Below are positions 1 through 41,699 of a stretch of DNA of 64,000 nucleotides, piece after piece. Below the pieces are notes generated by a model. It was not told where the DNA came from, made no database searches, and worked only from the letters and a program-made list of their open reading frames with translations. Within the stretch, counting starts at the first letter, position 1; every line of letters begins with the position of its first letter. This DNA comes from Ranitomeya imitator (lineage: Eukaryota): the NCBI RefSeq assembly GCF_032444005.1, contig NC_091283.1:45136001-45200000 (forward strand), given 5' to 3'. The translations under genes were made by a program, and so were the position numbers.

Positions 1-1730
1 TGAAGCACTTGGGGGTTCAAAGTGCTCACCACATATCTAGATAAGTTCCTTGGGGGGTCTAGTTTCTAAAATGGGGTCACTTGGGGGGGGTTCTACTGTT
101 TAGCCACATCAGGGGCTCTGCAAACGCAACGTGACGCCCGTAGAGCATTCCATCAAAGTCTGCATTTCAAAATGTCACTACTTTACTTCCGAGCCCGGCA
201 TGTGCCCAAACAGTAGTTTACCCCCACATCTGGGCTATCACCGTACTCAGGAGAAACTGGACAACAAATATTGGGGTCAAATTTCTCCTGTTACCCTTGG
301 GAAAATAAAAAATTGCGGGCTAAAAAATCATTTTTGAAAAAAGAATTTTTATTTTCATGGCTCTGCGTTATAAACTTCTGTGAAGCACTTGGGGGTTCAA
401 AGTCCTCACCACACATCTAGATTAGTTCCTTTGGGGGTCTAGTTTCCAAAATGGGGTCATTTTGGGGGGGATCTCCAATGTTTATGCACACAGGGGCTCT
501 CCAAACGCGACATGGCGTCCGCTAATGATTGGAGATAATTTTCCATTCAAAAAGTCAAAAGGCGCTCCTTCCCTTCCGAGCCCTGCCGTGTGCCCAAACA
601 GTGGTTTACCCCCACATATGAGGTATCGGCGTACTCGGGAGAAATTGCCCAACAAATTTTAGGATCCATTTTATCCTATTGGCCATGTGAAAATGAAAAA
701 ATTGAGGCTAAAAGAATTTTTTTGTGAAAAAAAAAAAAAAAGTACTTTTTCATTTTTACGGATCAATTTGTGAAGCACCTGGGGCTTTAAAGTGCTCACT
801 ATGCATCTAGATAAGTTCCTTGGGGCATCTAGTTTCCAAAGTGGGGTCACTTGTGGGGGAGCTCCAATTTTTAGGCACACGGGGGCTCTCCAAACGTGAC
901 ATGGTGTCCGCTAAAGAGTGGAGCCAATTTTTGATTCAAAAAGTCAAATGGCGCTCCTTCCCTTCCAAGCCCTGCCGTGCGCCCAAACAGTGGTTTACCC
1001 CCACATATGAGGTATCAGCGTACTCAGGACAAATTGGACAACAACTTTCGTGGTTCAGTTTCTCCTTTTACCATTGGGAAAATAAAAAAATTGTTGCTAA
1101 AAGATAATTTTTGTGACTAAAAAGTTAAATGTTCATTTTTTCCTTCCATGTTGCTTCTGCTGCTGTGAAGCACCTGAAGGGTTAATAAACTTCTTGAATG
1201 TGGTTTTGTGCACCTTGAGGGGTGCAGTTTTTAGAATGGTGTCACTTTTGGGTATTTTCAGCCATATAGACCCCTCAAACTGACTTCAAATGTGAGGTGG
1301 TCCCTAAAAAGAAATGGTTTTGTAAATTTCGTTGTAAAAATAAGAAATCGCTGGTCAAATTTTAACCCTTATAACTTCCTAGCAAAAAAAAAATTTGTTT
1401 CCAAAATTGTGCTGATGTAAAGTAGACATGTGGGAAATGTTATTTATTAACTATTGTGTCACATAACTCTCTGGTTTAACAGAATAAAAATTCTAAATGT
1501 GAAAATTGCGAAATTTTCGCCAAATTTCCGTTTTTATCACAAATAAACACAGAATTTATTGACCTAAATTTACCACTAACATGAAGCCCAATATGTCACG
1601 AAAAAACAATCTCAGAACCGCTAGGATCCATTGAAGCGTTCCCGAGTTATTACCTCATAAAGGGACACTGGTCAGAATTGCAAAAAACGGCAAGGTCTTT
1701 AAGGTCAAAATAGGCTGGGTCATGAAGGGG
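1..1730. mobile_element. Right part of a large non-autonomous piggyBac-type (TTAA) element with ~385-bp internal tandem subrepeats
   Basis: Ends ...catgaagggg|TTAA at 1730. The unit TGAAGCAC-GGGG-TT-AAAGT-CTCAC recurs at ~1, ~381 and ~771. The 3' part is homologous to 29348-29846 and 63660-64000. Confidence 0.7.
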
Positions 1731-1910
1731 TTAAGTGTGGTATAGAAATGAGGATCATTGCTGCTTTCTTTCAGGATCAATGAAGCAGTATTGTATTGCA
1801 TCTCTGCTTCAGTGATTGGAGAGATGATTTTTTAATTATGGACAACCCCTTTAATCAGCTTGGTCTTCCACCGCTATCAACCAATGTAAGATATGGGACC
1901 TGTCTCAAGA

Positions 1911-2760
1911 CAAAAAAAAGGGAAGAAGCCAGCACTGCTCATGGTCAGAACGCAATAACTGAAGTGCAATTGCACATAAATTCTAACTGTATTTCAAATA
2001 TGAGACATTTAGCAAACAATTGATCAATTCTTTGAGCTACCCCGCCCCTTCACGGCAATCTCATAATGGGGTAGTCCTAATCTACGTATTTTATTTACGT
2101 TGTGCCATTATGGCCTCCTGAATGTATAAAAGAAAAAAAAGGACCACATTAAATGCAAACTGTACCTGGAGCATTTTCAGAGTCACTCCCTTGGTGCCAG
2201 GAAAGGCAAGCGCAGGTAAAGGCCGATCAGGTCCAGTGCGGACATTTCAGATCTGGCTTCCACACTGCCAAACCCGCACCAAAGATGAAGGGTGAGACAG
2301 GCTGAGACACAGGTGCACAATTAACTCAATTAACTCAATTAACTAGTTAATTGTGCACCTGTGTCTCAGCCTGTCTCACCCTTCATCTTTGGTGCGGGTT
2401 TGGCAGTGTGGAAGCCAGATCTGAAATGTCCGCACTGGACCTGATCGGCCTTTACCTGCGCTTGCCTTTCCTGGCACCAAGGGAGTGACTCTGAAAATGC
2501 TCCAGGTACAGTTTGCATTTAATGTGGTCCTTTTTTTTCTTTTATACATTCAGGAGGCCATAATGGCACAACGTAAATAAAATACGTAGATTAGGACTAC
2601 CCCATTATGAGATTGCCGTGAAGGGGCGGGGTAGCTCAAAGAATTGATCAAATGTTTGCTAAATGTCTCATATTTGAAATACAGTTAGAATTTATGTGCA
2701 ATTGCACTTCAGTTATTGCGTTCTGACCATGAGCAGTGCTGGCTTCTTCCCTTTTTTTTG
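1911..2760. repeat. 850-bp near-perfect palindrome (416-bp arms, 18-bp spacer) flanked by a 14-bp direct repeat
   Basis: 1911-2326 is the reverse complement of 2345-2760 with one mismatch seen by eye (2019). ACCTGTCTCAAGAC occurs at 1898-1911 and 2765-2778. Confidence 0.95.
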
Positions 2761-2805
2761 CTTTACCTGTCTCAAGACTCGGCAACAAATGCAAGGACAG
2801 ATATG

Positions 2806-4383
2806 CACTGCTCAAAAAAAAAATAAAGGGAACACAAACAGAATATAACGCCAAGTAAATCAAACTTCTGTGAAATCAAACTGTCCTTAGGAAGCAATCA
2901 ATGACAATCAATTTCACATGCTGTTGTGCAAATGGAGTAGACAACAGATGGAAATTATTGGCAATTATCAAGACACACTCAATAAAGGAGTGGTTCTGCA
3001 GGTGGGGGTCACAGACCACATCTCAGTACCAATGCTTTCTGGCTGATGTGTTGGTCACTTTTGAATGTTGGTTGTGCTTTCACACTCGTGGTAGCATGAG
3101 ATGGACTCTACAACCCACAAAAGTGGCTCAGGTAGTGCAGCTCATCCAGGATGGAACATCAATGCGAGCTGTGGCGAGGTGGTTTGCTGTGTCTGTCAGC
3201 GTAGTGTCCAGAGGCTGGAGGTGCTACTAGGAGACAGGACAGTACACCAGGACACGTGGAGGGGGCTGTAGGAGGGCAACAACCCAGCAGCAGGACTGCT
3301 CCCTCAGCCTTTGTGCAAGGAGGAACAGGAGGAGCACTGCCAGAGCCCTGCAAAATGACCTCCAGCAGGCCACAAATGTGCATGTGTCTGCACAAACTGT
3401 CTGTTAGAAACAGACTCCATGAGGATGGTCTGAGTGCCCGACGTCCACAGATTGGGGTTGTGCTCACAGCCCAACACCGTGCAGGATGCTTAGCATTTGC
3501 CACATAACACTAGGATTGGCAAATTTGCCACTGGCGCCCTGTGCTCTTCACAGATGAAAGCAGGTTCACTCTGAGCACATGTGACAGACGTGACAGAGTC
3601 TGGAGATACCGTGGAGAGCGATCTGCTGCATGCAACATCCTTCAGCATGACCGGTTTGGCAGTGGGCCAGTAATGGTGTAGGGTGGCATTTCAGTGGAGG
3701 GCCGCAAAGCCCTCCATGTGCTCGCCATAGGTAGCCCGACTGCCATTATGTACCGAGATGAGATCCTCAGACCCCTTGTGAGACCATATGCTGGTGCGGT
3801 TGGACCTGGGTTCCTCCTAATGCAGGACAATGCCAGACCTCATGTGGCTGGAGTGTGTCAGCAGTTCCTGCAAGATGAAGGCATTGAAGCTATGGACTGG
3901 TCCGCCCGTTACCCAGACCAGAAATCCGATTGAACACATCTGTGACATCATGTCTCGCTCCATCCACCAACGTCACGTTGCACCACAGACTGTCCAGGAG
4001 TTGGCGGATGCTTTAGTCCAGGTCTGGGAGGAGATTCCTCAGGAGAACATCCACTGTCTCATCAAGAGCATGCCCAGGCATTGTAGGGAGATCATACAGG
4101 AACGTGGAGGCCACAAACACTACTGAGCATCATTTCCTTGTCTTGGGGCATTTCCTCTGAAGTTGGATCAGCCTGTAATTTGATTTTCCACTTTGATTTT
4201 GAGCATCATTCCAACTCCAGACCTCCATGGGATATTAGTTGTGATTTACGTTGATAATTTTTAGGTTTTATTGTTCTCAACACATTCCACTATGTAATGA
4301 ATAAAGATTTACAACTGGAATATTTCATTCAATGATATCTAGGATGTGGGATTTTAGTGTTCCCTTTATTTTTTTGAGCAGTG
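2806..4383 (+). mobile_element. Full-length but decayed Tc1-like DNA transposon
   Basis: TIR CACTGCTCAAAAAAA(A)TAAAGGGAACAC at both ends with TA on the right. Broken transposase fragments (VLFTDESRF-like at ~3540, LMQDNARPH, NPIEHICDIMSR) carry stops and frameshifts. Confidence 0.88.
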
Positions 4384-4427
4384 TATGTATAACCTCTTGC
4401 TGTAAAAAAATAAATGAAATTAACCTC

Positions 4428-4458
<31 letters not shown>

Positions 4459-4942
4459 TTCTCAATGTCCTAACTTGCAAAGTATCTGCAGACACCAGCA
4501 ACTTTGCAATTTAACTCTTATTAAAAATATCAAGAATGGAAGGATTTTAAATTCTATAGTTTGCTGCTTGATGCGAAGGCTACTGGGCACCGCTGCAGTC
4601 TGTCAGTGGTGGCCAACTCCTAGGCAAGAGGCGCAGCACTTACATCCTCTTTGTACAGAGCTTATGAGCGCTGCTCTGAAGCTGTCAGGATTTTGCATGA
4701 TCTGAGCAGCTTCAGAGCACCTGTGCTCCTACGAGGCTGCAGAGGGAAAGCGGTCTACTTTTTCCAAGGGGGAAGCGCACAGTTCGGGACGGTGTTGCCA
4801 ACATGAACTGTCAATCATCAGGAGCAAACCTTCTCCAATCAGCAAACATCCTGGACGCGGTAGGAGCGGCGCGTCCCTGGAGGACGACCGCACTAGTTTG
4901 TTTGTAATGTTCCCGTGAGTGTCGGGCTGGGTGTCCTCTTAC

Positions 4943-5031
4943 CATGGCCTGTATATAGGAGAAGTCCTTCCTCGCCTTGCAGTAAGCGTTCTTAAATTGC
5001 CGCTTCTCTGTTTCTGACCAATGATCTGAAC
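4943..5031 (-). CDS. znf541: znf541 exon, SANT helices 1-2 (GSDHWSETEKRQFKNAYCKARKDFSYIQAM)
   Basis: ctacag|GT acceptor and ATG|GTAAGA donor; W-(S/T)-x-x-E-K-x-x-F and K-D-F SANT motifs. Confidence 0.92.
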
Positions 5032-8000
5032 CTGTAGAATAACCGATATATCAGAATGCAAAATGGTCCTGGAAAATCAGTCGGGACAATAAATACAGCG
5101 AGGAGCCAGAACGATGCCCCAGAGCACATGCTAGTAGGACTACACAACGACGTTGGCCGCAGCACAGGGAGTGCGACCACAGATCTCTGTACGTCGCTGC
5201 TACGTCTCTGCATTGTGACCTGCCGGGGACAGCGACCGCTCAGTCAGCACCGTGGGGGTCACAACACCTCCCTGCTCGCTTTATGCAGAGAATTAGCAGC
5301 GGCACACAGCTATCTATGGCCGGACAACCGGTAGCCCCGGCCTTGGCCTCTCCGGTGCCGGCGGTGGCTTAGGATTTTCTTACCTGCATAGTGATAATCT
5401 ACAAGACATTGAGGAAGAAGTTTCTGATGCTTTGAATCTAAAAGTTTCTCCAGCGTCTCCTAAAGCAGAACATGAGAGAATCAGTGGCGTTTCTGACGTC
5501 CAGATCTTTTATTTCACACTTTTTTTTTTTTTTACACTTTTATGATGAATGGATGGATATATATATTAGTACAGACCAAAAGTTTGGACACACCTTCTTC
5601 TCATTTAAAGATTTTTCTGTATTTTCATGACTATGAAAACTGTACATTGAAGGCATCAAAACTATGAATTAACGCATGTGGAATTATATACTTAACAAAA
5701 AAGTGTGAAACAACTGAAAATATTTCTTATATTCTAGTGCTAGGAAACCACTGCTAAGGACAGCCAACAAGCAGAAGAGACTTGTTTGGGCTAAAGAACA
5801 CAAGGAATGGACATTAGACCAGTGGAAATCTGTGCTTTGGTCTGATGAGTCCAAATTTGAGATCTTTGGTTCCAACCACCGTGTCTTTGTGCGACTCAGA
5901 AAAGGTGAACGGATGGACTCTACATGCCTGGTTCCCACTGTGAGGCATGGAGGAGGAGGTGTGATGTGTGGGGGTGCTTTGCTGGTGACACTGTTGGGGA
6001 TTTATTCAAAATTGAAGGCATACTGAACCAGCATGGCTACCACAGCATCTTGCAGCGGCATGCTATTCCATCCGGTTTGCGTTTAGTTGGACCATGATTT
6101 ATTTTTCAACAGGACAATGACCCCAAACCACACCTCCAGGCTGTGTAAGGGATATTATATTAATAAATATATATATATATATATATATATATCTACCTCT
6201 AATTTTTTTTACTGAACTTTTAAAAGGATTTAAAAAATTAACCCTTTCTCAACATCGCCCTACGTGTAAAACGCATGTTGGAGTATGGAACAGGCTGAGG
6301 CACTGACCCCGCTCCGCACCAGCCAGATGCCACCTGTGTTGCACAGCCGGAGTCCTCCGCCAGCAGTGGATTGCTGCTATTAGCCTCTTAAATGCCACTA
6401 ACAATCTTTGACAATGGGCATTTAAAACAAGTCCATAGTGCTCGTTGTTCTGTGCACCCATCCCTTTCCCTGAAACACAAGAGCTGATGGGTATTCATTG
6501 CAGCCAGGAGACTGACACAGAAATCTATGGGGTTTCTCTATATACTGCATAAACAAAAATGGTGGGGTTTATGCTTTTTAAGGAAAAAAAAATATTTTGT
6601 CTTGCTTTTTGACATTTTTGGGAAACTTTACAAGTAATAAAGCTGACCCAATATTATGGGATGATTAGTATTTCTAAGCCATTCTGCCTACTCGACTAGG
6701 TCATGATTGGGTTTAAACAGCTGTGATTGGAGTTTGTTCCGATCCTGGCTCAGCTGGATGATGTATCCGCTACCTGCTGCCAAATGTGCAGGCTCCGCTC
6801 CTGTGCCATCTGCAGGCTGTATGGCTGTGTGGGGAGTATCACCCACCAATGCTGTAAGTATGTGACATGGAAGGCAAGGAATAAACAGTGTGCCCGTGCG
6901 GCTGACGGCACAGCTCCTGAGCCCCGTGCGGCTGATGGCACAGCTCCTTATCTCGTGCGGCTGATGACACAGCTCCTGAGCCCCGTGCGGCTGATGGCAC
7001 AGCTCCTTATCTCGTGCGGCTGACGGCACAGCTCCTTATCTCGTGCGGCTGATGGCACAGCTCCTTATCTCGTGCGGCTGACGGCACAGCTCCTGAGCCC
7101 GTGCGGCTGACGGCACAGCTCCTGAGCCCCGTGCGGCTGATGGCACAGCTCCTTATCTCGTGCGGCTGACGGCACAGCTCCTGAGCCCGTGCGGCTGATG
7201 ACACAGCTCCTGAGCCCGTGCCATCCGTTGCATGCACCAGAATAGATATTCGCAATGACCTATAAAGCAGGTAGGAGACTGAAGGACTCACCAAGACGTT
7301 GCCCCGGCTAAAATGCAGACAGTGGAGGGCGAGCTCCAGGTTGCAGCCTCCTCCGGGTACAGCACTGGAGCAGGCAAGTTTGACAAGATGGGAGACTAAG
7401 GAAACAAGAGACATTAGTGACTGAGAGGGAATCATGGCGACAAGTACGTGACAATAGTGAAACACTGATCCCATCGATGGATGTGCCAGACGGCAGGTTA
7501 TAACAGCCACAATGTGGAAACATTAATAAAAGTGGTCTACACAGAAAAGTAGATCTTCACTGAACCCCTTCAGTGCAGCCTTTGGCCACGTGCCTGATTA
7601 TGGAGCAGTATTATCGGGGGTCTGTAGACTTCCATAGGCACAGATGCCGTATACTGTAGAATAAGGTTCCCCGCAGAGGAGCGAAGTATTTCATTACATG
7701 GAAAGCCTACAAGCTTCTAATACAGACTCGGGACGGACCGCGCTTGGCTGGGAGGACGCGGTGTTCGGGCTGAGTCCTCCGATCTGAGCACAAGTCGTCC
7801 GGCCTCAGAGGGCCTCCACACGCTGCGTACAAGCCGCGCTCATAAATCTAACCCCCCCCCAGCATCATGCCACACATCTATGGCTCTGGTGGTACTTCCT
7901 CGGCAGCGGAGGTATCGCTCAGCCCGCACCTCCCTCAGCGGTCACACTATGTGCAATGGCCGGGTCTGTGGCTAAATCCTCCCAATCCTGACCACTTAAC

Positions 8001-11000
8001 CCCTTAAATACTGCTGACAAAAGCGACTGCAGCACCTGAATCATTTGTTGTAAGGTCGGGGTCAGAGGTGGAGAGGGGTTACACATCCTTAAAGGGGTGG
8101 GATAAAATCTATGGACAGGCAGGTAGTAAACATAGCATGTGACTTTAGATTACTGCCTACAATCATCATGTGCTGGCGAGGGGTCTTACTCTCTGCAGTG
8201 AGTCTCCGGGGTCTCCAAACCAAATCAGCCTTTTCCTCTTCTCCTCCCATCACGGAGCGGTCTCTGCACACCGGGATCGCCGCCTGGAACCGATCTCCGA
8301 TGTTAATGTGACTTAAAGGGGGGAAAAAAAATCCAAAATGTAATCTATTAAAGGGACGAGGTCTTACCCTCAGATTGCAGGGACTTACGGCTGGACAGAA
8401 AACTCTGTGGCGTCTATGACGAGGCCGACTCCGTCAGTGTCTATATCTGCGGGGGGTAACGTGCGCTGTAAGTACCATTATACACACAGTCGTCCCACCA
8501 CATGGAAACCAGTACTCACCATCAACACTGGGAGGCTGGTACTGGGCACTGGAGGGGGCGCAGAAGGTCTGGAAATAGAGGCCGGTCCCTTGGCGGATGG
8601 GGCTCAGCATGGGAGGGGGTGTATACTGGCAGTGGAGGGCGCCTTTATGGAAGTACTCGGATAGCGGGGTGTCTGGGGAGCGCATGCTGCTCTGGAAACA
8701 ACCAGAGGGGGCAGAATTGTTTTCCGACACCGGAGGGGGGATGTATAAGGGCAGAGGACAAGGTCTTGTCTCTTTCCCTTTTTTCAGGGTAGACTTTAGA
8801 TGATGACCTCTAAGTCCATTCACCTAAACAGCAAAGACAAAAGAAGAAGCGCCAACAGTTAAAGGGGTTGTCCGGGGAATAAAAATGACTTTCTTAAAGG
8901 GCTCCCCTCACCTTGTCGTCTTTCTTAGTGACGGGCACAGACACAGGGATTACAAGGCGTCCTGCAGTCTCCTCCTTGCTTGTCCAGGATCCCAGACATT
9001 GCTCTGTCGGCTCCCCCGTGCGTTGCCAGCTTACCGTATCCCCTTCTCGATTGTCCTTTTAAAAGATCCTATATTGTCATATTTTAACAAAGGTCTATAA
9101 ATGTTTACTTATTTTCAAAGAAAAATCATTTTTGTAATTGGTTTTTAATACAAATGTTGCACCGTTCTATAGCCTGAGTGTGTGTTGGGCTGTCTATTGC
9201 TCGGCTGAAGAATGAGTTAGCTGAAAATCTGTCAGTGATCTCGTTCTGATGGGGAGTTTATACCTCTTTTGTCTGTTTTTTTTTATACCTCAGTTCCTTT
9301 CAATTGATTTATGACGAAAGTTGGGCTGAACTTTGTGGTGTAGGATACCTGCCGCAACCTGGGTTAATGTGGTGCTGATAATAATCAAACAGAAAATTAA
9401 CTTTTTTTTAAAGTGTTACAAAACTTTGTAAAAGTTTTTACTGTATTGTGGCTCCTAAGGCCGATAACTAATATATGACCCATGTAATATCTTTTATTCC
9501 ATTTTTGGTGACCGAGGAATGATTAAAAAATATATATATATATATATATATATACAGCTCTGGCAAAAATTAAGAGACCACTTTTAAATGTTCAGTTTGT
9601 CTCATTTTCCTCTTTATAGGCATATTTTGAGTAAAATGTAAATTGTTCTTTTATTCTATAAACTACTGACTACATGTCTCCGAAGTTCCAAGCAATAAAT
9701 TTTGTATTTATTTTCTGAAAATGGTCAAAATAACAAAAAAAATGCATTGCTTTCAGACTTCAAATAATGCAAAAAAAAAAAAAAAACAAGTTCATGATCA
9801 TTTAGAAACAACAATACTAATGTTTTAACTCAGGAAGCGTTCAGAAATCAATATTTTGTGGAATAACCATGATTTTTAATCCCAGCTTTCATGCGTCTTG
9901 GCATGCTTTCCACCAGTCTTTCACACTGCTTTTGGGTGACCTTATGCCACTTCTGGTACAAAAATGTAAGCAGTTCTTCTTTGTTTGATGGCTATTTTAT
10001 CCAGCAGGACAATGCGCCATGCCACACAGGTAGGTCAATCAAGGCGTGGATGAAGGACCACCCTATCAAATCCCTGTCATGGGCAGCCAATCTCCAGACC
10101 TGAACCCCACTGATGAAGAGGATGATGGATAGTCACAAGCAATCAAAGAAGAACTGCTGACATCTTTGCGCCAGGAGCAGTGCGAAAGACTGGTGGAAAG
10201 CATGGCAAGACGCACGGAAGCTGTGATTACAAATCATGGTTATTCCACAAAATATTGATTTCTGAACTCTTCCTGAGTTAAAACATTAGTATTGTTGTTT
10301 CTAAATGATTATGAACTTTTTTTTTTTTTTTGCATTATTTGAGGTCTGCCAAGCACTGGATATTTTTTTTTATTATTTTGACCATTTCTCATTTTCAGAA
10401 AATAAATACAATATGTATTGCTTGGAACTTCGGAGACATGTAGTCAGTAGTTTATAGAATAAAAGAACAATGTACATTTTACTCAAAAATAAACCTATAA
10501 AGAGAAAAATCAGACAAAGTGAACATTTAAAAGTGGTCTCTTAATTTTTGCCAGAGCTGTATATTCTGCATGTCAGTGATAGGATGAACTATATAGCAGA
10601 ACTGAAGGTTCTGGGAAAGCAGGAGACAAGTTGCATCCATCCCGACTTGGGCAAATCCCTCCTGAGGTTATGCTCCCAGCAGAGGGCACAGACGCAGTGT
10701 GTACCTAGCCTAAGCCGTGACCTCCTCCTCACATGGTGTCACATAGATCATAGTAATAGGAAAGCAACAGGCGACAGCAGAAGCCAAGATGGGCCTCTAT
10801 ATGGCAGAGGCATCGTGCAAGGGGGACATCTAGTGGCAGCAAAGCAGTGGTGCAGATGTAGCTGTACAACTTTTTTTATGCTTAGTTTTTCAACTTTCTA
10901 ATAAGTCATGGCCCCCGTTTATTAGTCAATTTACTGTTTAAAAAAAAAAGTTGGGCAAAAACCTAAAACTTTTATGCTGTGTTGAGGAAAAAAAAAAGAG

Positions 11001-14000
11001 GCCAAGACCACCATCTGTGCCCCATTTAATATATTTCCTGAAACTTCACCCAATTTACTTCTCTTTAGGACTGGTGTCTTAATATGTGTTGGCCTAATTC
11101 CTCACCGAGATCTCTGCTTGCTGTCAGTGAATGGGAGCAGCTCTGGTGCACTGCAATAAACCATGCAGCTGATGAATGCAAACAGTAATTCCTCACTTCG
11201 GTGACAGCAAGCACAGATCTTGAGAATGGTGAAGACTCATTTTTTCTCCTAATAATGTATCATTCCTCTTAGATTTCACTCCTTGATCTCATTCTCGGGC
11301 AGTGACACCACTTACTTTTGACTTGCCGATAGAAAGTCTATACATTTTGTCATTACCCTGGGAAATATTTAAGGCCGTGAAGGACTCTAGGGCCACCTGA
11401 CTTGCAGGGACTGTGCTGGGATTGATGGCCGACTTGCACTGGGATCTTCCGAGCTTGGTCTGTATTTCATTTGTGCTGTTTTCCAGTGTCTGACTCTCCT
11501 GTCTGGGTCGGGCTTGTGTTGCGCCGTTTTGGCCTCCACTGGCCACGTCTTCTGCCGCCCTGCTGATTCTGCATGTTATCAGTCCCGGAGGGTCTCTTTG
11601 CAGCTCCCCCCAGCCTCTTATGCCAGTCGTTTCTGGATGCCACTGGGGCATGGACATACTGGGGAGAGTTAGGGTCGCGGTGTGAGAGATCGTAGACGGG
11701 GAATTTTTCACGGGAGGATAAACGTTTGCCGTGTTTTGGATCTGGAAGCCTGAATTTGGACAGAGCTGAATGGTAAGTCTTGTGAAATCTGGAGCATGGG
11801 GAAACGAATACTGCGCGTGCATGGCCTGGTGTCCATTATCTGCTGCGGGAGACGCGTACCTATGATCTAGGCGGTTCGGGTGCCTGGCCAGGGGCTCTTT
11901 AAATTCGCCACTTAGTGTGTCGTCATTAAAGGACCCGGGTAAAAGAATATCCGGCTGCTCCTGCAGAGGTCGGATCTTTGCAGGATACAGGAGATGATCT
12001 GCTGAAGGATCGGAGTACCTGGCATAGGCCGGATCCATGGACACTTTGCTAGAAGAATTAATCACGGTGTAAGTATTTCTGGCAGCAAAGTCTTCGCTCC
12101 ACTTACTGCTATTTAAAGTCATTGTCTGGGGGACATGGTTGGCCTTGGTGTCTTGCAAGACAGCCATATTGGACGTGACCTTCTGCTGTAAAATCTCAGT
12201 CGCCAGGCATCTGATGAGCTCAACATCGGGCAGGACTGGCGGGCCGGGGACTGGATCTAGCACTCTGCTTGGCGGTAATGCAGGGTTTGCGGTGGGTACT
12301 TCCGGCTGCCTTGGCCACAGTCCGTGGTGGAGCTCGTAGTGTCTCCTCAATGACCTGAAATCACAGTAGCTCTTGTTGCAGCCGGGCTCCGTGCACACGA
12401 ACGGTTTCACCTTCAGATGCGTCAGCATGTGTCCCATCCTGGGGAGGAAAGAGGAGACACCGTGACTACGTTACATGACAGCACCCGGCACAAGCTGAGC
12501 AGTTCTCACTATAGAGACCAGGTCTGTATAGATATGGAGGACTATCCACTACGACAGAATGAAAAGGCAAGTGGCACCTAATGGACATAGCTGCTCCAAA
12601 TTTAGTGTCTGGCCCTTGCAACACAACCTTTTTTTGATGCCTGCCCCTTCTCAGGGTGGCACAGATTGGAGGGATGATCCCTGATCCTGTTGCGAGGCTC
12701 GTTAAGGGGTGGACCTAGACTTACCGCACCGCTACCTCCAATCGATGGCACTCTATTCTGCAGAATGCATATGAATTTTTGGCATTTGGGGTGAATTGGG
12801 ACGGCGGTGGGAAGTTTGCATGTGAATATACATCTGCTTTAGTGATTCGTCAGAAATAGATATATAGTGCGATTTTCTTCTAATCAAGTCATTCAAAACA
12901 TTAGACGTACTGGTGCATCCTATGCCTGGTGCAGGGTCAGGGGCTGAGCTCGCTCAGATGATGGCTGTGTTATACTGCCGGCACCTGCCTCCAAAAATTG
13001 GCGCAAGCTCCAACTGTAGCGGTTTACTCAATTACACACCGCTGTCAATTCGATAGCATTATTTACATGGTGCGATCACATCATGCGACTGTCCGGGCAC
13101 CTATTGGCCCCACTGTGAGGGGATTGCTGATGGGTTGCCATGGCAGTCGGGAGCCTACTGAAAAGCCCCCTATTGCCAAAAACTTTGTACAACCTGCATT
13201 GGGACTTCATAGGAAATCTACATTCATTTTCTAAACTGCAACATTATAGTGCAAATGGTCAAACGATCACAGGTTCAAGTCCCCCAGGGGGACAAAGAAA
13301 AATAAATAAAAAAAAACCAAAAGTTATACATATACAGTATATCTCCAACTACAATTTACCCAATTCAAAAGTAAAAGAAAAAAAACATATTAAGTGTTGT
13401 TGGGTCCATAAAAGTTTAATCTACGGAAATATACAACTAATTAATTCTTAAGGTAAAAACCACAGAGATATGTGGCTATGTTATTGGAAAAATAAAAATT
13501 ACAGCTCTTTGAAGAGAGGAACACAAAAAAAGAGCAAAAAAAAAAAAATTAGAATGTTGTGCCCAACGTTATGGATGAAGGGCGCATGCACTTGTCTCCA
13601 GCATTTTTAAGTCTTATGAGTGCGCAAAAAAAAAATTGGATGCCATACAGAAAATCCATTTGGCATCCAATTTTTACGGATAGTTTGCAATTAAGAAACT
13701 TTATTTGATCTTGTAACTTTTCTTAAATTCTGATGTAAAAAATTGGATGCAAAAAAACAAAACAAAACGGACATATAGGTAAAAACTGTGCGATTTTTCA
13801 GGAAGAAAGCATTTCATAGGCTTGTCTGTACGCGGCCTTGTGGGCAGCGAGACGACATCCTGTATTGCATTACTACATGGCCGGCGGTCCGGGTACATAC
13901 AGGTGGTCCTGTCTTTTGAAGGCTTTCATGCAGATCTTGCAGATGTGACTTCGCTCCTGGCTGTGGGTGACCGAGTGTTTGTTGAGGGAGCCGGTGCTGG

Positions 14001-15142
14001 AGAAGACCTTCCCGCACACCTTGCAGTTCAGCATGGTGGTCTGAACGCATTTCTCGGTGCAAGACTTGTTCAGTAGCGAACTGCTGCCCTCAGCGCCTCC
14101 GAGGTGGAGATCTGGAAGGGGCAAAATGAGAAATCTAATCAGCATAGGGCAATTCTGCAGCGATCCCTAATGAAGGGGGTTGGTCGGGATTTAGGAGCGC
14201 CCCCTCGGGGACCTGTCTATCTCAAGAACAGGGGTCCCATTTCCCTTACTCTGCTATTTATTGGATCTCTCGTTTACAGCCACCACCTCAGCAGGTAAGA
14301 CGGGCATTGGGAGGACCCCATTCTTGAGACAGGTGCAGTTCCCCGGAGGTGGGACTGATCTCCATCAGATATTGCTGAAATAAGCCCAACACTCGATGAC
14401 CACAAGTCACTTAGAAAATTAAAGGGGAAAAGACTGCAGTAGCTCTAAAGGCAAACAAACTGGGATTTAATTACTTTCCCGGGGTCTAGCGCCGAGGCTC
14501 CGCCGCTTCTTCAGTCTCAGTTGTTTGTCTGCAGTGCTAACGTCACTTCAACAGCGCTGCAGCCAATCAGTAGTTTATTCTGTCTATAATGCAGTGTACC
14601 CCCATGGTCTCCTGTGTTCCCAAATGAAGCCACCAAAAAAAAAAATAGAATGGTGGCGTGCATGCTCACCCTCCACCACATTCAGAAGGGGCTCTATAGA
14701 ACCCTCTTCTTGTTTTTTGGGGGACCTGCGTGCTAGGAATGCTGTCCCCTATGCCATCCATAGGTGTTATAATTCAACATTTTTTAAGTAGGGAAACACC
14801 CCAAAGATAAGGGAAATAGTAACATCATGTTGTCAATTTATTTCTATTTTTCCAGGAGTAACCAAGGGACAGCACAAGGCAACATCGATGTTTTAAGATT
14901 GTTCTAGGGGAATACAGGGATAGGTGACGGATCCTGATGAAAGACAAACCTGCGTCCCATTTATTGGTGACCGCCGATACCTCCTCCATCCTGCAGGGCA
15001 GAAGTATATCCCCCAACATGACGTCAGCGGAGCTTAGACCGTGGTCCGGAGGCTGGAAGAGCTCGCTGATGGGCTGGAACAACTCCCGGCAGAAGTCATC
15101 GGGCTGGAGGCCGAATCCATCGTTTAAGCTGAAATGGGTCAT
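4943..15142 (-). CDS. znf541: Zinc finger protein 541 (ELM2-SANT / C2H2 meiotic transcriptional co-repressor), spliced CDS, 3'-incomplete. Exons: 15142-14950, 14111-13901, 12438-11316, 9055-8912, 8823-8520, 8446-8389, 8311-8190, 7395-7292, 5459-5384, 5031-4943
   Basis: Manual splicing gives GT-AG introns with matching phases (1,2,0,0,1,2,1,0,1). The product has CKVCGKVFSSTGSLNKHSVTHSQERSHICKICMKAFKRQDHLMGHMLTHLKVKPFVCTEPGCNKSYCDFRSLRRHYELHH, then YTPPPMLSPIRQGTGLYF, ELM2 (PHINIGDRFQAAIP...LVWRP...LACSSAVPGGGCNLELALHCLH) and SANT (GSDHWSETEKRQFKNAY...KDF). Order and motifs match human ZNF541 as I recall it. Confidence 0.92.
5384..5459 (-). CDS. znf541: znf541 exon, ELM2-SANT linker (ETLEKLL...LVDYHYA)
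   Basis: ctttag|GAG acceptor and CAG|GTAAGA donor; DYHYAG family motif. Confidence 0.9.
5572..6150 (+). mobile_element. Truncated Tc1-like fragment in a znf541 intron
   Basis: TA|CAGACCAAAAGTTTGGACACACC terminus; remnants LWSDESKFEIFGS, PTVRHGGGGVM and FQQDNDPKH. Confidence 0.85.
6890..7222. repeat. ~29-31-bp minisatellite (CCCGTGCGGCTGATGGCACAGCTCCTGAG and a CCTTATCT variant) in a znf541 intron
   Basis: About 11 tandem units are visible; they explain ORFs 6688..7029 and 7007..7510 in part. Confidence 0.9.
7292..7395 (-). CDS. znf541: znf541 exon, ELM2 C-part (LVKLACSSAVPGGGCNLELALHCLHFSRGNVL)
   Basis: ccttag|TC acceptor and TTG|GTGAGT donor; PGGG-x-N-x-ELALHCLH family motif. Confidence 0.93.
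8190..8311 (-). CDS. znf541: znf541 exon, ELM2 domain N-part (HINIGDRFQAAIP...ADLVWRP)
   Basis: tttaag|T acceptor and A|GTAAGA donor; canonical ELM2 I-G-x-x-F-Q-A-x-I-P motif. Confidence 0.92.
8389..8446 (-). CDS. znf541: znf541 58-nt exon (DIDTDGVGLVIDATEFSVQP)
   Basis: ccgcag|AT acceptor and CC|GTAAGT donor; phases 1/2 join the neighbours exactly; resembles human DGSFGICVVKDDTKISIEP. Confidence 0.85.
8520..8823 (-). CDS. znf541: znf541 exon with the YTPPPMLSPIRQGTGLYF motif
   Basis: gtttag|GTG acceptor and G|GTGAGT donor; motif conserved in the ZNF541/TRERF1/ELMSAN1 family. Confidence 0.92.
8912..9055 (-). CDS. znf541: znf541 144-nt exon not in the ORF track (DNREGD...GRLVIPVSVPVTKKDDK)
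   Basis: AAG|GTGAGG donor; the LVIPVSVPV motif resembles the ZNF541/TRERF1 V-P-V-S-V-P-V segment; phase 0/0. The acceptor (ttttaaaag|) is weak, so the 5' boundary is less certain. Confidence 0.72.
9555..10559 (+). mobile_element. Internally deleted Tc1-like element with long TIRs, inserted at the end of a (TA)n run
   Basis: TA|CAGCTCTGGCAAAAATTAAGAGACCAC...GTGGTCTCTTAATTTTTGCCAGAGCTG|TA; inverted arms of roughly 300 bp; residual QQDNAPCH and SPDLNP transposase remnant. Confidence 0.9.
11316..12438 (-). CDS. znf541: znf541 large exon (end of finger 2, finger 3, low-complexity linker)
   Basis: ccccag|G acceptor completes the CTG codon; open for 374 codons; AAA|GTAAGT donor. Ends QGNDKMYRLSIGKSK, compared with human IQGGNIYRL. 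Confidence 0.92.
13901..14111 (-). CDS. znf541: znf541 exon, C2H2 finger 1 and most of finger 2
   Basis: ttccag|AT acceptor and CT|GTATGT donor; encodes CKVCGKVFSSTGSLNKHSVTH-SQERSHICKICMKAFKRQDHL. Confidence 0.93.
14950..15142 (-). CDS. znf541: znf541 first coding exon (MTHFSLNDGFG...KWDA)
   Basis: Acceptor tttttag| just before 15151, ATG at 15142, donor CAG|GTTTGT at 14950/14949 (phase 1). The N-terminus resembles human MDQYSLGD. Confidence 0.75.
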
Positions 15143-26987: not shown

Positions 26988-29846
26988 ACCCCTTAACGAC
27001 TGCCGATACGCCTTTTAACGGCGGCAGTTAAGGGTACTTAAACCACAGTGCCGTTAATTAACGGCGCTGTGGAAAAAGTGAATAGCGCCCCCCAGAGTCG
27101 GATTTTCTCTGGGGTCTCAGTTGCCGGGGGTAGCCGAGACCCCAGAGAACATGATTCGGGGATTTTTTACCGACCCCCGTATTAACCCTTTACCGGCGGT
27201 CGCACAAAAAAAACCTGCGATTTCCCATTTAATGTCTCTGTCCTCCGATGGGATCGCACATCAGAGGACTGAGAAATGGGGTCCCCGATAGCCCCCGATA
27301 CTCACCCTTCTCCCCCGGTGCTCCTCGTGGCTCCCGATGGGCGCTGCCATCTTGTTCCGGCCAAAAAATGGCGGGCGCAAGCGCAGTGCGCCCCCCGGCC
27401 AGCACCCGGAAGATCTTTGGGGTCTCGGCTGCCAGGTTTTGCGATCGCTGGTAATTAACTGTTTACCGGCGGCCGCAAAAAAAAAAGCGATCTGTCATTC
27501 TCTGTCCTCTGATGTGATCGCACATCAGAGGACAGAGAAATAGGGGGATTCGGGGACCCTATTATACTTACTGGTGTCCCTGGGTTCTCCTGCGTCTCCT
27601 TCAGCCCGCCGGCTTCTTCATCCGGTAAGAAAATGGCGGGCGCATGCGCAGTGCGCCCGCCATGATCGGCCGGCAGCCAGAGGAGTTGGGGCTAAATTTA
27701 GGGTTAGGGTTGGGGCTAAATTTAGGGTTAGGGCTAGGGTTAGGGTTAGGCTTCTTTCACACTTGCGTCGGTACGGGGCCGTCGCAATGCGTTGGCCCGA
27801 CGTATCGACGCACATTGTGAAAATTGTGCACAACGTGGGCAGTGGATGCAGTTTTTCAACGCATCCACTGCCCAGTCTATGTCTTGGGGAGGAGGGGGCA
27901 GAGATACGGCCACGCATGCGCGGTCGGAAATGGCGGACGCGACGTACAAAAAAAGTTACATTGAACGCTTTTTTTGTGACGACTGTCCTCATATGACCTC
28001 TAGCGTGGGAACTTTTCTGAATATTTTCCCAGCCTCGAGGTCATATGAGGACATCCAGCAGAGGGCGCATCACCGCGAATGAAGGTAACTACAGGTTATT
28101 GACCTACATTACCTTCATTCCCCGGGGTTTTACAGGCAGGAGCACAGATGCATTATAGCAGAGCTCCTGCCTGTAAAATAATTTAACCCCTTCAGATGGA
28201 TTTACATCGTGGGACATATCGACGGAAGGTATGAGATATTGTTGGTTTATTATTTTTACTTTGTTACAGGTCGAGGGTCTTCAGGTGGATTGAGAGTGGA
28301 ATAAAATATTACAACAACCTGTGTGTTTATTTCATTAAAATACTTTGCAATATTGTTTGTGTGTTTTTGTAACCATTTCATGCTATTGGATTAATAATGG
28401 ATAGGTGTCATAATTGACGCCTCTCCATTATTAATCTGGCTTAATGTCACCTTACAATAGCAAGGTGACATTAACCCTTCATTACCCCATATCCCACCGC
28501 TACACGGGAATGGGAAGAGATTGGCCAAGTGCCAGAATAGGCGCATCTTCCAGATGTGCCTTTTCTGGGGTGGCTGGGGGCAGATGTTTTTTTAGCCAGG
28601 GGGGAAGCCAATAACCGTGGACCCTCTCCAGGATATTAATATCTGCCCTCAGTCTCTGGCTTTACTACTCTGGCGGAGAAAATTGCGCAGGAGCCCACGC
28701 CAATTTTTTCCGCCATTTAACCCTTTAATCTAATAGCCCAAATTTTGCACATACACACTACTAACATTAGTAGTGTGGAATATGCAAAAAAAAATGGAGA
28801 GAAGACATGGTTTACTGTATGTAAACCAGGTCTCAAATCATGTCGGGTTTAGGAAGGAGATGGCAAAAGCCGGTAATTGAATTACCGGCTTTTAAGCTAT
28901 CTAGCGCTGTATGAAATATTAATATATATACATATATGTGTCTACTGACATATATATATATATATATATATATATACCTATTCTATGTGTACACATTTAT
29001 TCTACCTATTCTACTGTAACCTGTCAGTGTGATTTTACTGTACACCGCACTGAATTGCCGGCTTTTCTATAGAACATCGCTGCGTATTTCTCGCAAGTCA
29101 CACTGCTGGTCCGTGTGTAATCTGTATTTTTCTCACCCCCATAGACTTTCATTGGCGTATTTTTTGCGCAATACGGTGACAAACGCAGCATGCTGCGATT
29201 TTCTACGGCCGTAGAAGACCGTATAATACGGATCAGTAAAATACAGCTGATAGGAGCAGGGGCATAGAGAAGCATTGTACCGTATGCAATCCGTATTTTC
29301 TGCACCTCTCATACGTCCATAAAACACGGTAGTGTGACCCCGGCCTGAGGGGTGCAGTTTTTAGAATGGTGTCACACTTGGTTATTTTCTATCATATAGA
29401 CCCCTCAAAATGACTTCAAATGTGATGTGGTCCCTAAAAAAAATGGTGTTGTAAAAATGAGAAATTGCTGGTCAACTTTTAACCCTTATAACTCCCTAAC
29501 AAAAAAAAAAAATTGTTTCCAAAATTGTGCTGATGTAAAGTAGACATGTGGGAAATGTTATTTATTAACTAGTTTGTGTTACATATCTCTCCGATTTAAG
29601 GGCATAAAAATACAAATTTTGAAAATTGCTAAATTTTAAAAATTTTCGCCATATTTCCGTTTTTTTCATAAATAATCGCAAGTAATACCACTTGCCACTA
29701 ACATGAAGTACAATATGTCACCAAAAAACAGAATCAGCGGGATCCGTTGAAGCGTTCCAGAGTTATAACCTCATAAAGTGACAGTGGTCAGAATTGTAAA
29801 AATTAGCCCGGTCATTAAGTACCAAATTGGCTCTGTTACTAAGGGG
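26988..29846 (+). mobile_element. Complete non-autonomous piggyBac-type element with telomere-like repeats and a nested composite insert
   Basis: TTAA|CCCCTTAACGAC...ACTAAGGGG|TTAA. The left end matches 62569 onward and the right end matches 1210-1730. TTAGGG-like repeats at 27686-27750. Confidence 0.75.
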
Positions 29847-30836
29847 TTAAGGATGAAAATGGAAAGATTCCGAGATCCGTTCAGCGTCATGTAAAATTTT
29901 TGTGTTTTTTTTTTAGCTTTTTAACATTATTTCTCAAGATCATACTATGGTGATGTCTAGAATTGTGCAGATAATCGCAAACTGTAGGAAATGTTTATGC
30001 TCGAGTCTTTTATATTGTTTCCATTTTCTTCATTGATTTCACTTAAAGGTGCATTTAATTAAAGGGGTAGTCTGATTTGGACATCTCTTATCTGCCAACA
30101 GGACAAGCTGGTCAGCCATTGTTTTAGGGGAAGGATGCAACAAAGCACTGGTCAGTGAGCTACCACTCTGTCATTCAGTCCATAAGCTGTGTTTATGGGT
30201 GCGGATATCTCCAGCAGTCCCATAGACAATGAATGGAGTGGTGGGTATTTATGCAGAACGGTGGGGGTCCCGGATATCATCCAACAAACAGGTTGCGACA
30301 AAACCTTTAGGCCGAAAACTTAAAAGGAATGAGGCAGGACTAGTCCGGGAGAAGAGACGCCTGATCTGCTTATACAATGAGTGGAATAAAAGTCAGATCT
30401 TCAGACGTTACAGCGAAGTTACATAAAAGACGTGATCACATTAAAGAGATCTGCGCCGTATAGATGCAGTTGGGGACCGGACAGCTTCCATTTAAAGTGG
30501 TATTTACGAAATGGTAATTTATCCCCTCTCCACTGATCACAAAAAATGAGAGTAAAGCGCAGATGCCTGACCTCTGCTGCGTTCATTGTCTATAGGACGG
30601 CTGGAGAAAACAGAGAACAGCGCTCCGCTATTTCAGGCAGTCCTATTGTCAATGAATGGAGCAAAGATGGAACCTGTGCACTTGGCTCTGCGGAGACGCA
30701 TTCTTGGGATCACGGGTCGGACCCCCAGCGAAGTGCAAATTAGCCCCTACTTGTCATTTTGGCTACACCCCTTTTAACCTGAATCAACTTTGTGACCCCT
30801 TGACTCTTCTGGTTGGGGCGTGGAGATCCCCATATA

Positions 30837-35190: not shown

Positions 35191-35619
35191 TCCCTTATAA
35201 TCAGGGTTTTTCCTGATCTCTGTTCTATAATAATCTTTATATAGCGCTAACACATTCCGCAGCGCTTTACAGTTCGCTGTCCCCGCTGGGGCTCACAATC
35301 TAGATTCCCCGTCAGTATGTCTGTTCTGCACAATAGTTGCAGGCCCTGTGAAATAACCATCTCGGAGAGTCTTTTCCTAGGACGCTGTGCTCTATCATTC
35401 CTATTACTCCTCCTGGAAACGTAGGAATAAGCTGACAACAGAGCATTACCATTGACAAGTGTGCGCCCCTCCACCCACACTGGCACGGGTGAACAGTAAA
35501 GACCAAAATCGTCGATGACTACATTTCCAGGAGGAATAACAGAGGCACAGCAACAGCGTAACCCACAGCAGTCCTGGGGGAAAAGAAGCTGCAGAACTAT
35601 TATGTATTGGTAAGCATGA

Positions 35620-38350: not shown

Positions 38351-39588
38351 AACGACTGCTGATCAGCCGTCAGGTTACGTTCCCACAATGAATGTTTGTT
38401 GAGTTTGTGATGTTTCAGATTTTCTGCACCATTTTGTTACTTGCATTATTTTACATGTATTTTTTTTGTCTTTTGTTTGTGTGTCATGTTTTAAATAAAG
38501 TTGCTTTGTTTTTTTTTAAATACTATTTTGACACTACATTGTTTTTGGTAGTATTTGGCTTTGACAAAACTTTATTTATAGTCATGTGTGAATTACATGT
38601 ATTTTTCATGCATTTCCACTGCAGTTTGTTTACCTGTGGATTTTCCACACCTAAAGTCTACGGGGAATATCTACACAGAAAACTCAGCGTACTCGCAGGA
38701 GAAATTGATGCACCGTGGATCTGATATACGCACCGTGGATCCAATAAACACACCGTGCATCCGATACACGCACCACAGGTCAATTCACACTGGAGAAGAA
38801 CGGTTCTTGAAAAATATGCAGCATAAAAAAAAGCACCGAATACTCATTGTGGGAACGTAGCCTTAAGGCTGTGGCGCCCACATTGCAGAATAGAAGCAGA
38901 ATTTTCTTCTTCAGTTCTGCATACCCTTTGCAGGAAAAACTCATGCGGATTCAGTCGCGTTTTAAACACGTTTTTGACGCGTTTTGCATGCGATTTTCAA
39001 GTGTTTTTCTAATCCATGTCTATGGGTGCGGAATTGCAGCGATTCCGCACAAATAATGAACATGCGGTGTTTTTAACCGCGATGTGATTCCACCGCGGAA
39101 AAAAAACGCATCATGGGCACATCAATTGCGGAATGCATTGGAAATGAATGGGATGCTGTTTGTAAGAGTTTTTTAAGCGTTTCTGCAGCGGAAAATTGCG
39201 GCAAAACCGCTTAAAAAAACGCAACGTGGGCACATAGCCTAAAGTAAATCCATGTAATCTGAGAGCGGCATGATGTAGGGGCAGAGACCCTGATTTCTGC
39301 ATTGTGTCACGGACTCTCACTGGAAATCGCTCCAGATTTGAGTTTTAAGTAAAAATGGCTGCAAAATGAGTAAAGAAAAACAAAACAAACAAAACAAGTA
39401 AAAGTAAATAAAAAAAAAAACAATAGCTCCGTAACTTTGAACAGATTTCTGAATTGGCGAAACAATAAAATAATCGCTGTGATGGGGTTCGGTATGACCT
39501 CGGCTTCAGAACTTGGCGCGGTCTTGCTCCTCTCTGGGGGAGGGGTATGGCTTTTGTCATACAAGTTCCATGCTGGAATCAAAGAGAG

Positions 39589-41463: not shown

Positions 41464-41699
41464 GCAGGAGGACAGCCTGCCCTGACCCCGAGTCCTGCTG
41501 CTGCTCACACTCCTCTGCCCCCCAGGGCTCCTGCCGGGCTGATTTGCATGTCAATGTCGGCAGCAGCAGGCAGTGCCCAGTGTGGGGGCAGAGCTCCCCT
41601 CCCAGCACCTCCTATTTGGGTGGGTTCCATTGTTTTGGAGGAGGGGAGAGAAGGGAGGAGACTCAGGAGTGGGAAGTGGGGGAAAAAAATAACCCTCTG

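What the first reader, a model, noticed from the sequence alone, without database searches (positions are those of the whole stretch)
1898..2778. 850-bp near-perfect palindrome with a 14-bp direct-repeat flank, probably inside the znf541 transcript
Seen: two 416-bp arms (1911-2326 and 2345-2760) differ at one base. ACCTGTCTCAAGAC flanks the insert on both sides (1898-1911 and 2765-2778), with a short CTTT filler. The right junction CTTTACCTG also occurs inside the arm (2450-2458). The arms show no recognisable MITE terminus or transposase and look like single-copy sequence. Inference: a very recent fold-back (hairpin) insertion at a staggered break, either templated/microhomology-mediated repair or a Penelope-type inverted insertion. 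znf541 lacks its 3' exons in this window, so the palindrome probably lies in an intron. The pre-mRNA of a germline gene would then carry a ~416-bp perfect dsRNA stem, a potential endo-siRNA, ADAR or back-splicing substrate that could silence the arm's source locus in trans.
Basis: partly seen in the sequence, partly recalled or inferred. Interest (0 to 1): 0.75.

Follow-up and report, generated by a model that had tools for sequence, protein, structure and literature searches.

The report
Mirror-image pair of jumping-gene copies
The 850-base palindrome is real, but its arms are not unique DNA: they are two back-to-back copies of the end of a repeat found many times in this poison-frog genome, pasted in together in one event, which is an ordinary though tidy example of how some copy-and-paste elements insert.

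Summary
Arms 1911-2326 and 2345-2760 are 416 nt each and differ at one position (2019/2652). The 14-mer ACCTGTCTCAAGAC flanks them at 1898-1911 and 2765-2778, with CTTT between the right arm and its 14-mer.

The claim that the arms are single-copy does not hold. In contigs from four public runs (two frog species), each variable arm position carries 10-50 distinct variant contigs at 90-99% identity. Some copies continue past the arms' inner end into other sequence. Two joints in the second species fit fold-back copies with unequal arms.

Both arms share at least four letters that are rare in the family, so they come from one template.

The 14-bp duplication fits no cut-and-paste transposon I know of. 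It fits reverse transcription primed at a staggered nick. Best reading: a young head-to-head double insertion of the 3'-terminal ~420 nt of a multi-copy retroelement, the architecture described for Penelope-like elements.

Penelope membership is unproven: the arms hold no hammerhead, and I could not reach a full-length copy.

The same scan has noted similar fold-back insertions with 13-18-bp duplications elsewhere in this genome.

Location in znf541, transcription, and any siRNA or ADAR role remain untested.

The parts
1898..1911 (.). Left copy of the 14-bp target-site duplication, ACCTGTCTCAAGAC. Its last base, C1911, also pairs with G2760, so it can be counted with the arm.
   Evidence: (family D20).
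1911..2326 (-). Left arm, 416 nt. It is a copy of the terminal part of a multi-copy repeat. If the outer end is the element's 3' end, the element's sense strand here is the minus strand.
   Evidence: One search shows tens of variant contigs per site, a contig that ends at about 1912, and other copies that run on past 2326.
2318..2344 (.). CAATTAACT three times. The right arm has this unit once, so the left arm carries two extra units (18 nt). Most likely slippage when the two halves were joined.
2339..2350 (.). Head-to-head junction: the perfect 12-nt palindrome TTAACTAGTTAA, with no spacer.
2345..2760 (+). Right arm, 416 nt, the mirror image of the left arm apart from position 2652.
2761..2764 (+). 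CTTT between the right arm and the duplication. Inferred to be the last four bases of the element's 3' end (...TTTTTTTTGCTTT). At the left junction the target's own AAGAC stands in the place of AAAGC (microhomology).
2765..2778 (.). Right copy of the 14-bp target-site duplication.

Best explanation
This is a young head-to-head ('fold-back') double insertion of a multi-copy retroelement. An element-encoded endonuclease nicked the two strands of the target 14 bp apart. Each of the two exposed 3' ends primed reverse transcription from the 3' end of the same kind of RNA, so two antisense cDNAs grew towards each other with their 3' ends facing outwards. Both stopped at the same point, about 420 nt in. 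They were joined at a short self-complementary stretch (CTAG, TTAA), with some slippage on a 9-mer. Filling in the staggered ends gave the 14-bp duplication. Shown: the structure, the duplication, the multi-copy nature of the arms, and the common origin of the two arms. Inferred: the RNA intermediate, priming from both ends, and the enzyme. The architecture is the one described for Penelope-like elements and for the elements they mobilise. No cellular function is implied.
For: (1) Multi-copy family. In contigs of four runs from two species, arm positions carry 10-51 distinct contigs with an alternative letter, for example 2038, 2047, 2072, 2157, 2599 and 2731. Laid contigs are 90-99% alike. 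The neighbouring stretch 1763-1819 has essentially none.
(2) The outer end is the family's end and the inner end is not. A contig ends at 1912. Contigs in X1 run past 2326 into TGAGCCTGAGGCGGGGCAGGGCTGC, and X8 shows the reverse complement before 2345 (table 7). The arms are therefore a terminal piece cut short on the inside, as in 5' truncation.
(3) Both arms share rare letters. The window has T/A at 2072/2599 where nearly all other copies have C/G. It is also in the minority at 2047, 2182 and 2731, each mirrored in the other arm. The arms differ from each other only once, so they are sister copies of one template.
(4) The exact 14-bp duplication is far beyond chance.
(5) Two joints in species B (2327 to 2544 with TTA between; 2302 to 2628 with ACGTGGT between) fit other fold-back copies with unequal arms (table 5c).
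(6) Published description of Penelope-like elements: 5'-truncated copies, an adjacent inverted 5'-truncated copy, palindromes at the inverted junction, head-to-head as the commonest form, and a TATA box in the terminal repeat (PMC8557442; PMC3846280). The arm has a GC box at 2040-2048 and TATAAAAG at 2125-2132.
(7) Leads only, unchecked: this scan noted other fold-back insertions with 13-18-bp duplications in the same genome, several linked to hammerheads or Penelope-type elements.
Against: No reverse transcriptase or GIY-YIG endonuclease could be tied to this family, because I could not fetch any full-length copy. The arms contain no hammerhead ribozyme (Rfam at E up to 1; no CUGANGA on either strand), although canonical Penelope terminal repeats usually have one. 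There is no 30-40-bp 'tail'. Both arms end at exactly the same internal base. That needs either a short template RNA of about 420 nt or a preferred stop, and it would also fit a palindromic unit that moves as a whole. The runs were contigs only, so neither the junctions of this particular locus nor an empty allele could be seen in independent data. The published duplications for rotifer Penelope elements are 8-10 bp, not 14.
Confidence: 0.6

Rival explanations
1. The 850-bp palindrome is itself the mobile unit. It would be a non-autonomous foldback element (two inverted terminal repeats with nothing between) that is copied or moved as a whole. It could be a DNA-transposon MITE or a pair of inverted Penelope-type terminal repeats mobilised in trans.
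For: Both arms stop at the same internal base. A joint in species B also breaks at 2327, which could be a deletion derivative of such a palindromic unit. In rotifers, terminal repeats alone suffice for mobilisation in trans (PMC3846280). The window also holds ordinary long-armed transposon derivatives, for example 9550-10564.
Against: To my knowledge, a 14-bp duplication plus four extra bases fits no DDE transposon superfamily; their duplications are fixed at 2-11 bp. Other copies run past the inner end into different sequence, and fold-back copies differ in their centres, so the centre seems to be made anew at each insertion. The arms' termini match no known transposon end, and there is no second copy in 64 kb.
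Confidence: 0.17
2. DNA-level fold-back. Unique or local DNA was duplicated in inverted orientation by hairpin formation, template switching or microhomology-mediated repair at a chance double-strand break.
For: The arms are near-perfect and the centre is spacer-less with short self-complementary words. CTTTACCTG occurs both at the right junction and inside the arm at 2450-2458, which could hint at a template switch.
Against: The arms are not unique DNA. They end outwards exactly where a multi-copy family ends. A direct 14-bp duplication of the flank is not what a replication fold-back produces; such events duplicate the flank in inverted orientation.
Confidence: 0.06
3. Assembly or long-read fold-back artefact.
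For: Other follow-ups on this assembly could not confirm a 12.9-kb palindrome in short-read data (unchecked note). I could not see this locus's junctions in independent reads.
Against: A chimeric read does not create a direct target duplication, does not stop exactly at the terminus of a repeat family on both sides, and does not add a base difference and an 18-nt length difference between the arms.
Confidence: 0.03
4. On top of being an insertion, the palindrome acts as a hairpin-RNA gene. Transcribed inside a germline gene's intron, it would give double-stranded RNA that feeds siRNA, piRNA or ADAR pathways against the family. This does not exclude the main explanation.
For: Predicted RNA stem of -840.7 kcal/mol. 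A C2H2 exon lies upstream on the minus strand. One contig of a run guessed to be RNA carries ten A-to-G changes at 2126-2157 that no DNA run shows.
Against: There is no evidence that this locus is transcribed. The edited-looking contig comes from another copy (it runs on past 2326), and the run's RNA label is a guess. The A-to-G changes are confined to 32 nt.
Confidence: 0.07

Closest known systems
Penelope-like element insertions with an inverted 5'-truncated copy (inverted pseudo-LTRs), as described by Arkhipova and colleagues (PMC3846280, PMC8557442)
   Same: Head-to-head inverted copies with 3' ends outwards, truncation on the inner (5') side, a short perfect palindrome at the inverted junction, a target-site duplication, and TATA-type promoter words in the repeated terminal part. 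The family is high-copy and forms fold-back copies repeatedly.
   Different: There is no ORF between the arms, no hammerhead in the arms, and no 30-40-bp tail. The duplication is 14 bp, against 8-10 bp reported for rotifer elements. The link to a Penelope reverse transcriptase or GIY-YIG endonuclease is not shown.
Animal retrozymes and other non-coding repeats mobilised by Penelope-type enzymes
   Same: A non-coding unit of about 400 nt, a fold-back insertion, and a 13-16-bp duplication.
   Different: No hammerhead motif and no tandem monomer structure here.
L1 twin priming (5'-inverted L1 insertions; from my own knowledge)
   Same: Both 3' ends of a staggered break prime reverse transcription. 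The product has an inverted part and a variable 7-20-bp duplication.
   Different: Twin priming inverts a different, upstream part of one RNA, so it does not give two identical arms. L1 products also end in poly(A), which is absent here.
Foldback elements and long-armed MITEs of DNA transposons (for example Drosophila FB or Galileo, and Tc1-derived MITEs such as 9550-10564 in this window)
   Same: Two long inverted arms with little or nothing between, in a multi-copy family.
   Different: Those have fixed short duplications (TA, 7-9 bp) and recognisable transposon termini. Here the duplication is 14 bp with four extra bases, and the termini match no superfamily.

Membership tests
Penelope-like element (PLE) insertion | ORF with a PLE-type reverse transcriptase and a GIY-YIG endonuclease in full-length family members | not testable with these tools
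I could not fetch any other copy. The arm is absent from the rest of the window.
Penelope-like element (PLE) insertion | Adjacent inverted 5'-truncated copy, head-to-head, with a palindrome at the junction | tested here: met
   The arms' outer ends coincide with the family terminus and the inner ends are truncated. The 12-nt palindrome lies at 2339-2350. The feature is as described.
Penelope-like element (PLE) insertion | Hammerhead ribozyme in the terminal repeat (canonical clades) | tested here: not met
   No hammerhead family among the Rfam matches at E up to 1 on 1-8000. No CUGANGA in 1880-2800 on either strand. Some PLE clades lack it, and the motif could lie further inside than 416 nt.
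Penelope-like element (PLE) insertion | Target-site duplication of variable length | tested here: met
   14 bp, exact.
Penelope-like element (PLE) insertion | 30-40-bp 'tail' at one end (optional) | tested here: not met
   Only CTTT (4 nt) lies between the arm and the duplication.
DNA-transposon foldback / MITE | Duplication of the fixed length typical of a DDE superfamily (2-11 bp), directly abutting the inverted ends | tested here: not met
   14 bp, with four extra bases on one side. The superfamily values come from my own knowledge.
DNA-transposon foldback / MITE | Many copies sharing the same two-armed structure | tested here: inconclusive
   The family is multi-copy. The few informative contigs show different centres and copies running on past the arm. 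Most contigs are too short to tell.
L1-type twin priming | The inverted and direct parts are different, adjoining segments of one RNA, with a poly(A) tail at the 3' end | tested here: not met
   The two arms are the same segment. The 3' end is T-rich, not poly(A).
Hairpin-RNA (endo-siRNA) locus | Transcription through both arms and small RNAs mapping to them | not testable with these tools
   Only contigs were available, and they were dominated by other copies.

The most novel reading that the evidence does not exclude
The inverted pair sits in an intron of a germline-expressed zinc-finger gene. It would be transcribed into a 416-bp perfect hairpin that is diced or edited. Each new fold-back insertion of this family into a gene would then create a trans-acting silencer of the family: a built-in brake that arises from the element's own way of inserting.
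Probability: 0.07. Interest if true: 0.55.

Novelty: new member of a known kind. Interest (0 to 1): 0.22.

Why it matters
It matters mainly as a correction. The palindrome is not a fold-back of unique DNA with a donor locus to silence. It is one more inverted double insertion of an abundant frog repeat.

It is a clean specimen, with an exact 14-bp duplication, a spacer-less junction, possible microhomology at one end, and only one base difference between the arms. It could therefore help to work out how Penelope-type or similar enzymes make inverted dimers, which the literature still calls unresolved.

Such insertions also scatter long perfect hairpins through genes of a TE-rich genome. That is relevant for double-stranded-RNA pathways and for assembly quality control.

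Tried and rejected
- **Other arm copies in the window:** none (blastn, word size 7).
- **Paralogous empty site:** none. The 13-mer at 14322-14334 has no similar flanks.
- **Rfam:** only meaningless sub-threshold microRNA-type hits on the hairpin centre. Nothing at gathering score in the whole window.
- **Hammerhead word search:** none in the arms.
- **Public contig scans with arm words:** two metagenome scans and one viral scan gave nothing. The single hit, L001, is a chance 23-mer in an unrelated contig.
- **Protein word search with the ORF that reads through the right junction:** meant to recover other copies' termini. No candidates.
- **Protein word search with the zinc-finger exon:** meant to name the gene. 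No candidates. That tool only sees proteins of similar length, so this says nothing about znf541.
- **Pfam on the ten longest ORFs:** only two Tc1-type transposases. No reverse transcriptase or GIY-YIG.
- **Depth along the arms:** higher in the outer third in X1 and X4, which would suit 5' truncation. The tool warns that contig depth cannot rank parts of a stretch, and X8 does not show the trend, so I give it no weight.
- **Scan notes by sequence:** blank.

Full report
**1. The observation**

- Arms 1911-2326 and 2345-2760 are 416 nt each. They are complementary at every position except 2019/2652.
- ACCTGTCTCAAGAC flanks the insert at 1898-1911 and 2765-2778. CTTT lies at 2761-2764, between the right arm and its 14-mer.
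- The 14-mer has no other exact match in 64 kb. About 0.01 matches are expected by chance with up to one mismatch allowed.
- A third match with one mismatch, at 14321-14334, has no similar flanks and is chance.
- As RNA the stretch folds to -840.7 kcal/mol, against -242 for shuffles.

One refinement concerns the centre. The 18 nt between the arms are two extra copies of CAATTAACT. This unit stands three times at 2318-2344 and is followed at once by its reverse complement at 2345-2353. The palindrome therefore has no spacer; its centre is TTAACTAGTTAA at 2339-2350.

**2. The arms are a multi-copy repeat, not unique DNA**

I laid contigs of four public runs on 1250-2950. The runs come from two coded species, A and B. 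Three are DNA or unlabelled, and one is guessed to be RNA.
- Contigs cover the arms with many different sequence versions at 90-99% identity.
- At single positions, 10 to 51 distinct contigs carry an alternative letter. Examples are 2038, 2047, 2072, 2157, 2182, 2599 and 2731.
- The stretch 1763-1819 just to the left has essentially no contigs.
- A single-copy locus cannot give this picture.
Poison-frog genomes are known to be dominated by young repeats (PMC6278860 and PMC11152451, listed).

**3. Where the family ends**

- On the outside, a contig ends at 1912 and coverage stops at the arm's edge (tables 2 and 8).
- On the inside, contigs of run X1 continue past 2326 into TGAGCCTGAGGCGGGGCAGGGCTGC. 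Run X8 shows the reverse complement of that sequence before 2345 (table 7).
- The arm is therefore the terminal about 420 nt of something longer, cut short on its inner side.
- Two joints in species B fit other fold-back copies with unequal arms and different centres. One goes from 2327 to 2544 with TTA between. The other goes from 2302 to 2628 with ACGTGGT between (table 5c).

**4. The two arms are sister copies**

- At 2072/2599 the window has T/A, where virtually all other copies have C/G.
- At 2047, 2182 and 2731 the window's letter is also in the minority, and each of these is mirrored in the other arm.
- That gives at least four differences from the family majority, all shared by both arms, against a single difference between the arms.
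- The arms therefore came from one template or from each other, and recently.
- One change in 416 bp suggests an age of roughly a million years at typical vertebrate mutation rates. The error is very wide, and gene conversion between the arms could hide a greater age. This dating is inference.

**5. Mechanism**

*What the duplication means.* An exact 14-bp direct duplication means the two strands were cut 14 bp apart and filled in.
- To my knowledge, cut-and-paste transposases give fixed duplications of 2-11 bp.
- Lengths of 13-18 bp, variable from copy to copy, are typical of insertion by reverse transcription primed at a nick.

*The proposed steps.* After such a cut, both DNA ends carry a free 3' end.
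- If each end primes a cDNA on the 3' end of the element's RNA, the result is two copies with 3' ends outwards and 5' ends meeting in the middle. That is the arrangement seen here.
- The joint lies in a stretch rich in self-complementary words (CTAG, TTAA, AATT). Two identical cDNA ends can pair with each other through such words.
- The two extra 9-mers look like slippage at that step.

*The CTTT.*
- The right junction reads ...TTTTTTTTG-CTTT-ACCTG.
- The left junction, read on the other strand, gives ...TTTTTTTTG-TCTT-GAGAC.
- If the element ends in ...TTTTTTTTGCTTT, the right arm is complete.
- At the left, the target's own AAGAC takes the place of AAAGC.
- That gives four of five pairs, counting one G-U pair, which would be the usual microhomology between a nicked target and the RNA's end.
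- On this reading CTTT is part of the element, not filler. This is inference. It needs the family's terminus from other copies.

**6. Comparison with what is known**

The published description of Penelope-like elements matches point by point:
- strong 5' truncation;
- an inverted 5'-truncated copy next to the direct one;
- inverted repeats that upset assemblies (PMC8557442);
- palindromes at the inverted junction, with head-to-head as the commonest form;
- TATA and initiator words in the terminal repeat;
- mobilisation of foreign sequence in trans through the terminal repeats alone (PMC3846280).

The arm has a GC box at 2040-2048, TATAAAAG at 2125-2132 and a CAG|GTAAAG donor-like site at 2213-2221.

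Membership is nevertheless unproven:
- The arms hold no hammerhead.
- There is no 30-40-bp tail.
- I could not link any reverse transcriptase or GIY-YIG gene to the family.

L1 twin priming works in a similar way, but it inverts a different part of one RNA and leaves a poly(A) tail, so it does not fit.

Unchecked notes of this scan report other fold-back insertions with 13-18-bp duplications in the same genome. Several are tied to hammerheads, retrozymes or Penelope-type elements. I used these as leads only.

**7. Rivals**

- *A palindromic unit that moves as a whole.* This would explain why both arms stop at the same base. It is contradicted by the 14-bp duplication (for a DNA transposon) and by the differing centres of other copies.
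- *A DNA-level fold-back of local sequence.* This does not explain why the arms end exactly at a repeat family's terminus, nor the direct duplication.
- *An assembly artefact.* This would not make a target duplication, and it would not put a base difference and a length difference between the arms. I could not see this locus's junctions in independent reads, so long-read confirmation is still wanted.

**8. Gene context and function**

- A C2H2 zinc-finger exon lies on the minus strand at about 13900-14097. It encodes CKVCGKVFSSTGSLNKHSVTH followed by half of a second finger that ends at a GT.
- The palindrome is downstream of that exon in the gene's direction, so an intronic position is possible.
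- I could not name the gene, and I did not see exons on the other side.
- Nothing shows that this locus is transcribed.
- One contig from the run guessed to be RNA carries ten A-to-G changes within 2126-2157 that no DNA run shows. That looks like ADAR editing. However, the contig comes from another copy of the family, the RNA label is a guess, and the changes are confined to 32 nt. I leave this open.

**9. What could not be done**

- No tool here searches this genome as a whole.
- The family's consensus end, its full-length form and its spread of duplication lengths therefore remain to be determined.

**10. Verdict**

This is a real and tidy, but ordinary, transposable-element insertion: a new member of a known kind.

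Noticed in passing
window 2126-2157 (contig of run X5, tables 3 and 8, record 24): A 376-nt contig from a run guessed to be RNA matches the arm at 2094-2326 and runs on beyond it. It carries ten A-to-G changes within 32 nt. At six of these positions the three other runs show no such change at all. This could be ADAR-type hyper-editing of a family transcript, or a private variant copy.
   Followed up: partly
window 1-1123: A tandem array of 2.9 units of 389 bp at 79% identity. No Rfam hammerhead at E up to 1. The unit size is close to that of the frog 'retrozyme' monomers noted elsewhere by this scan.
   Followed up: no
window 1250-1762: An extremely abundant repeat in all four runs, with around 100 variant contigs per site. 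Another copy at 81% identity lies at 29740-29851. It lies just left of the contig-poor stretch at 1763-1819.
   Followed up: no
window 2794-4395: A decayed Tc1-type transposon starts 15 bp to the right of the duplication. Its inverted ends are CACTGCTCAAAAAAA..AAAGGGAACAC (pairs I6 and I7), and the transposase is broken across several frames. The arm's outer end (AAAAAAAAGGGAAG...GCACTGCTCA) shares both short words with this end but in swapped order. This is probably chance.
   Followed up: partly
window 9550-10564: A Tc1/mariner-derived element of about 1 kb with arms of about 400 bp (93-97% alike), TA flanks and a remnant of transposase between the arms. It is a useful contrast: this is what a DNA-transposon foldback looks like in this genome.
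   Followed up: partly
window 13900-14097, minus strand: An exon-like open stretch with one complete and one half C2H2 zinc finger, ending at a GT. It is the only C2H2 pattern in the window. I could not confirm the gene's name.
   Followed up: partly
window 32654-35200 and 39307-41748: Very long open reading frames in several overlapping frames and on both strands, with no Pfam match. They are probably stop-free tandem repeats rather than genes.
   Followed up: no
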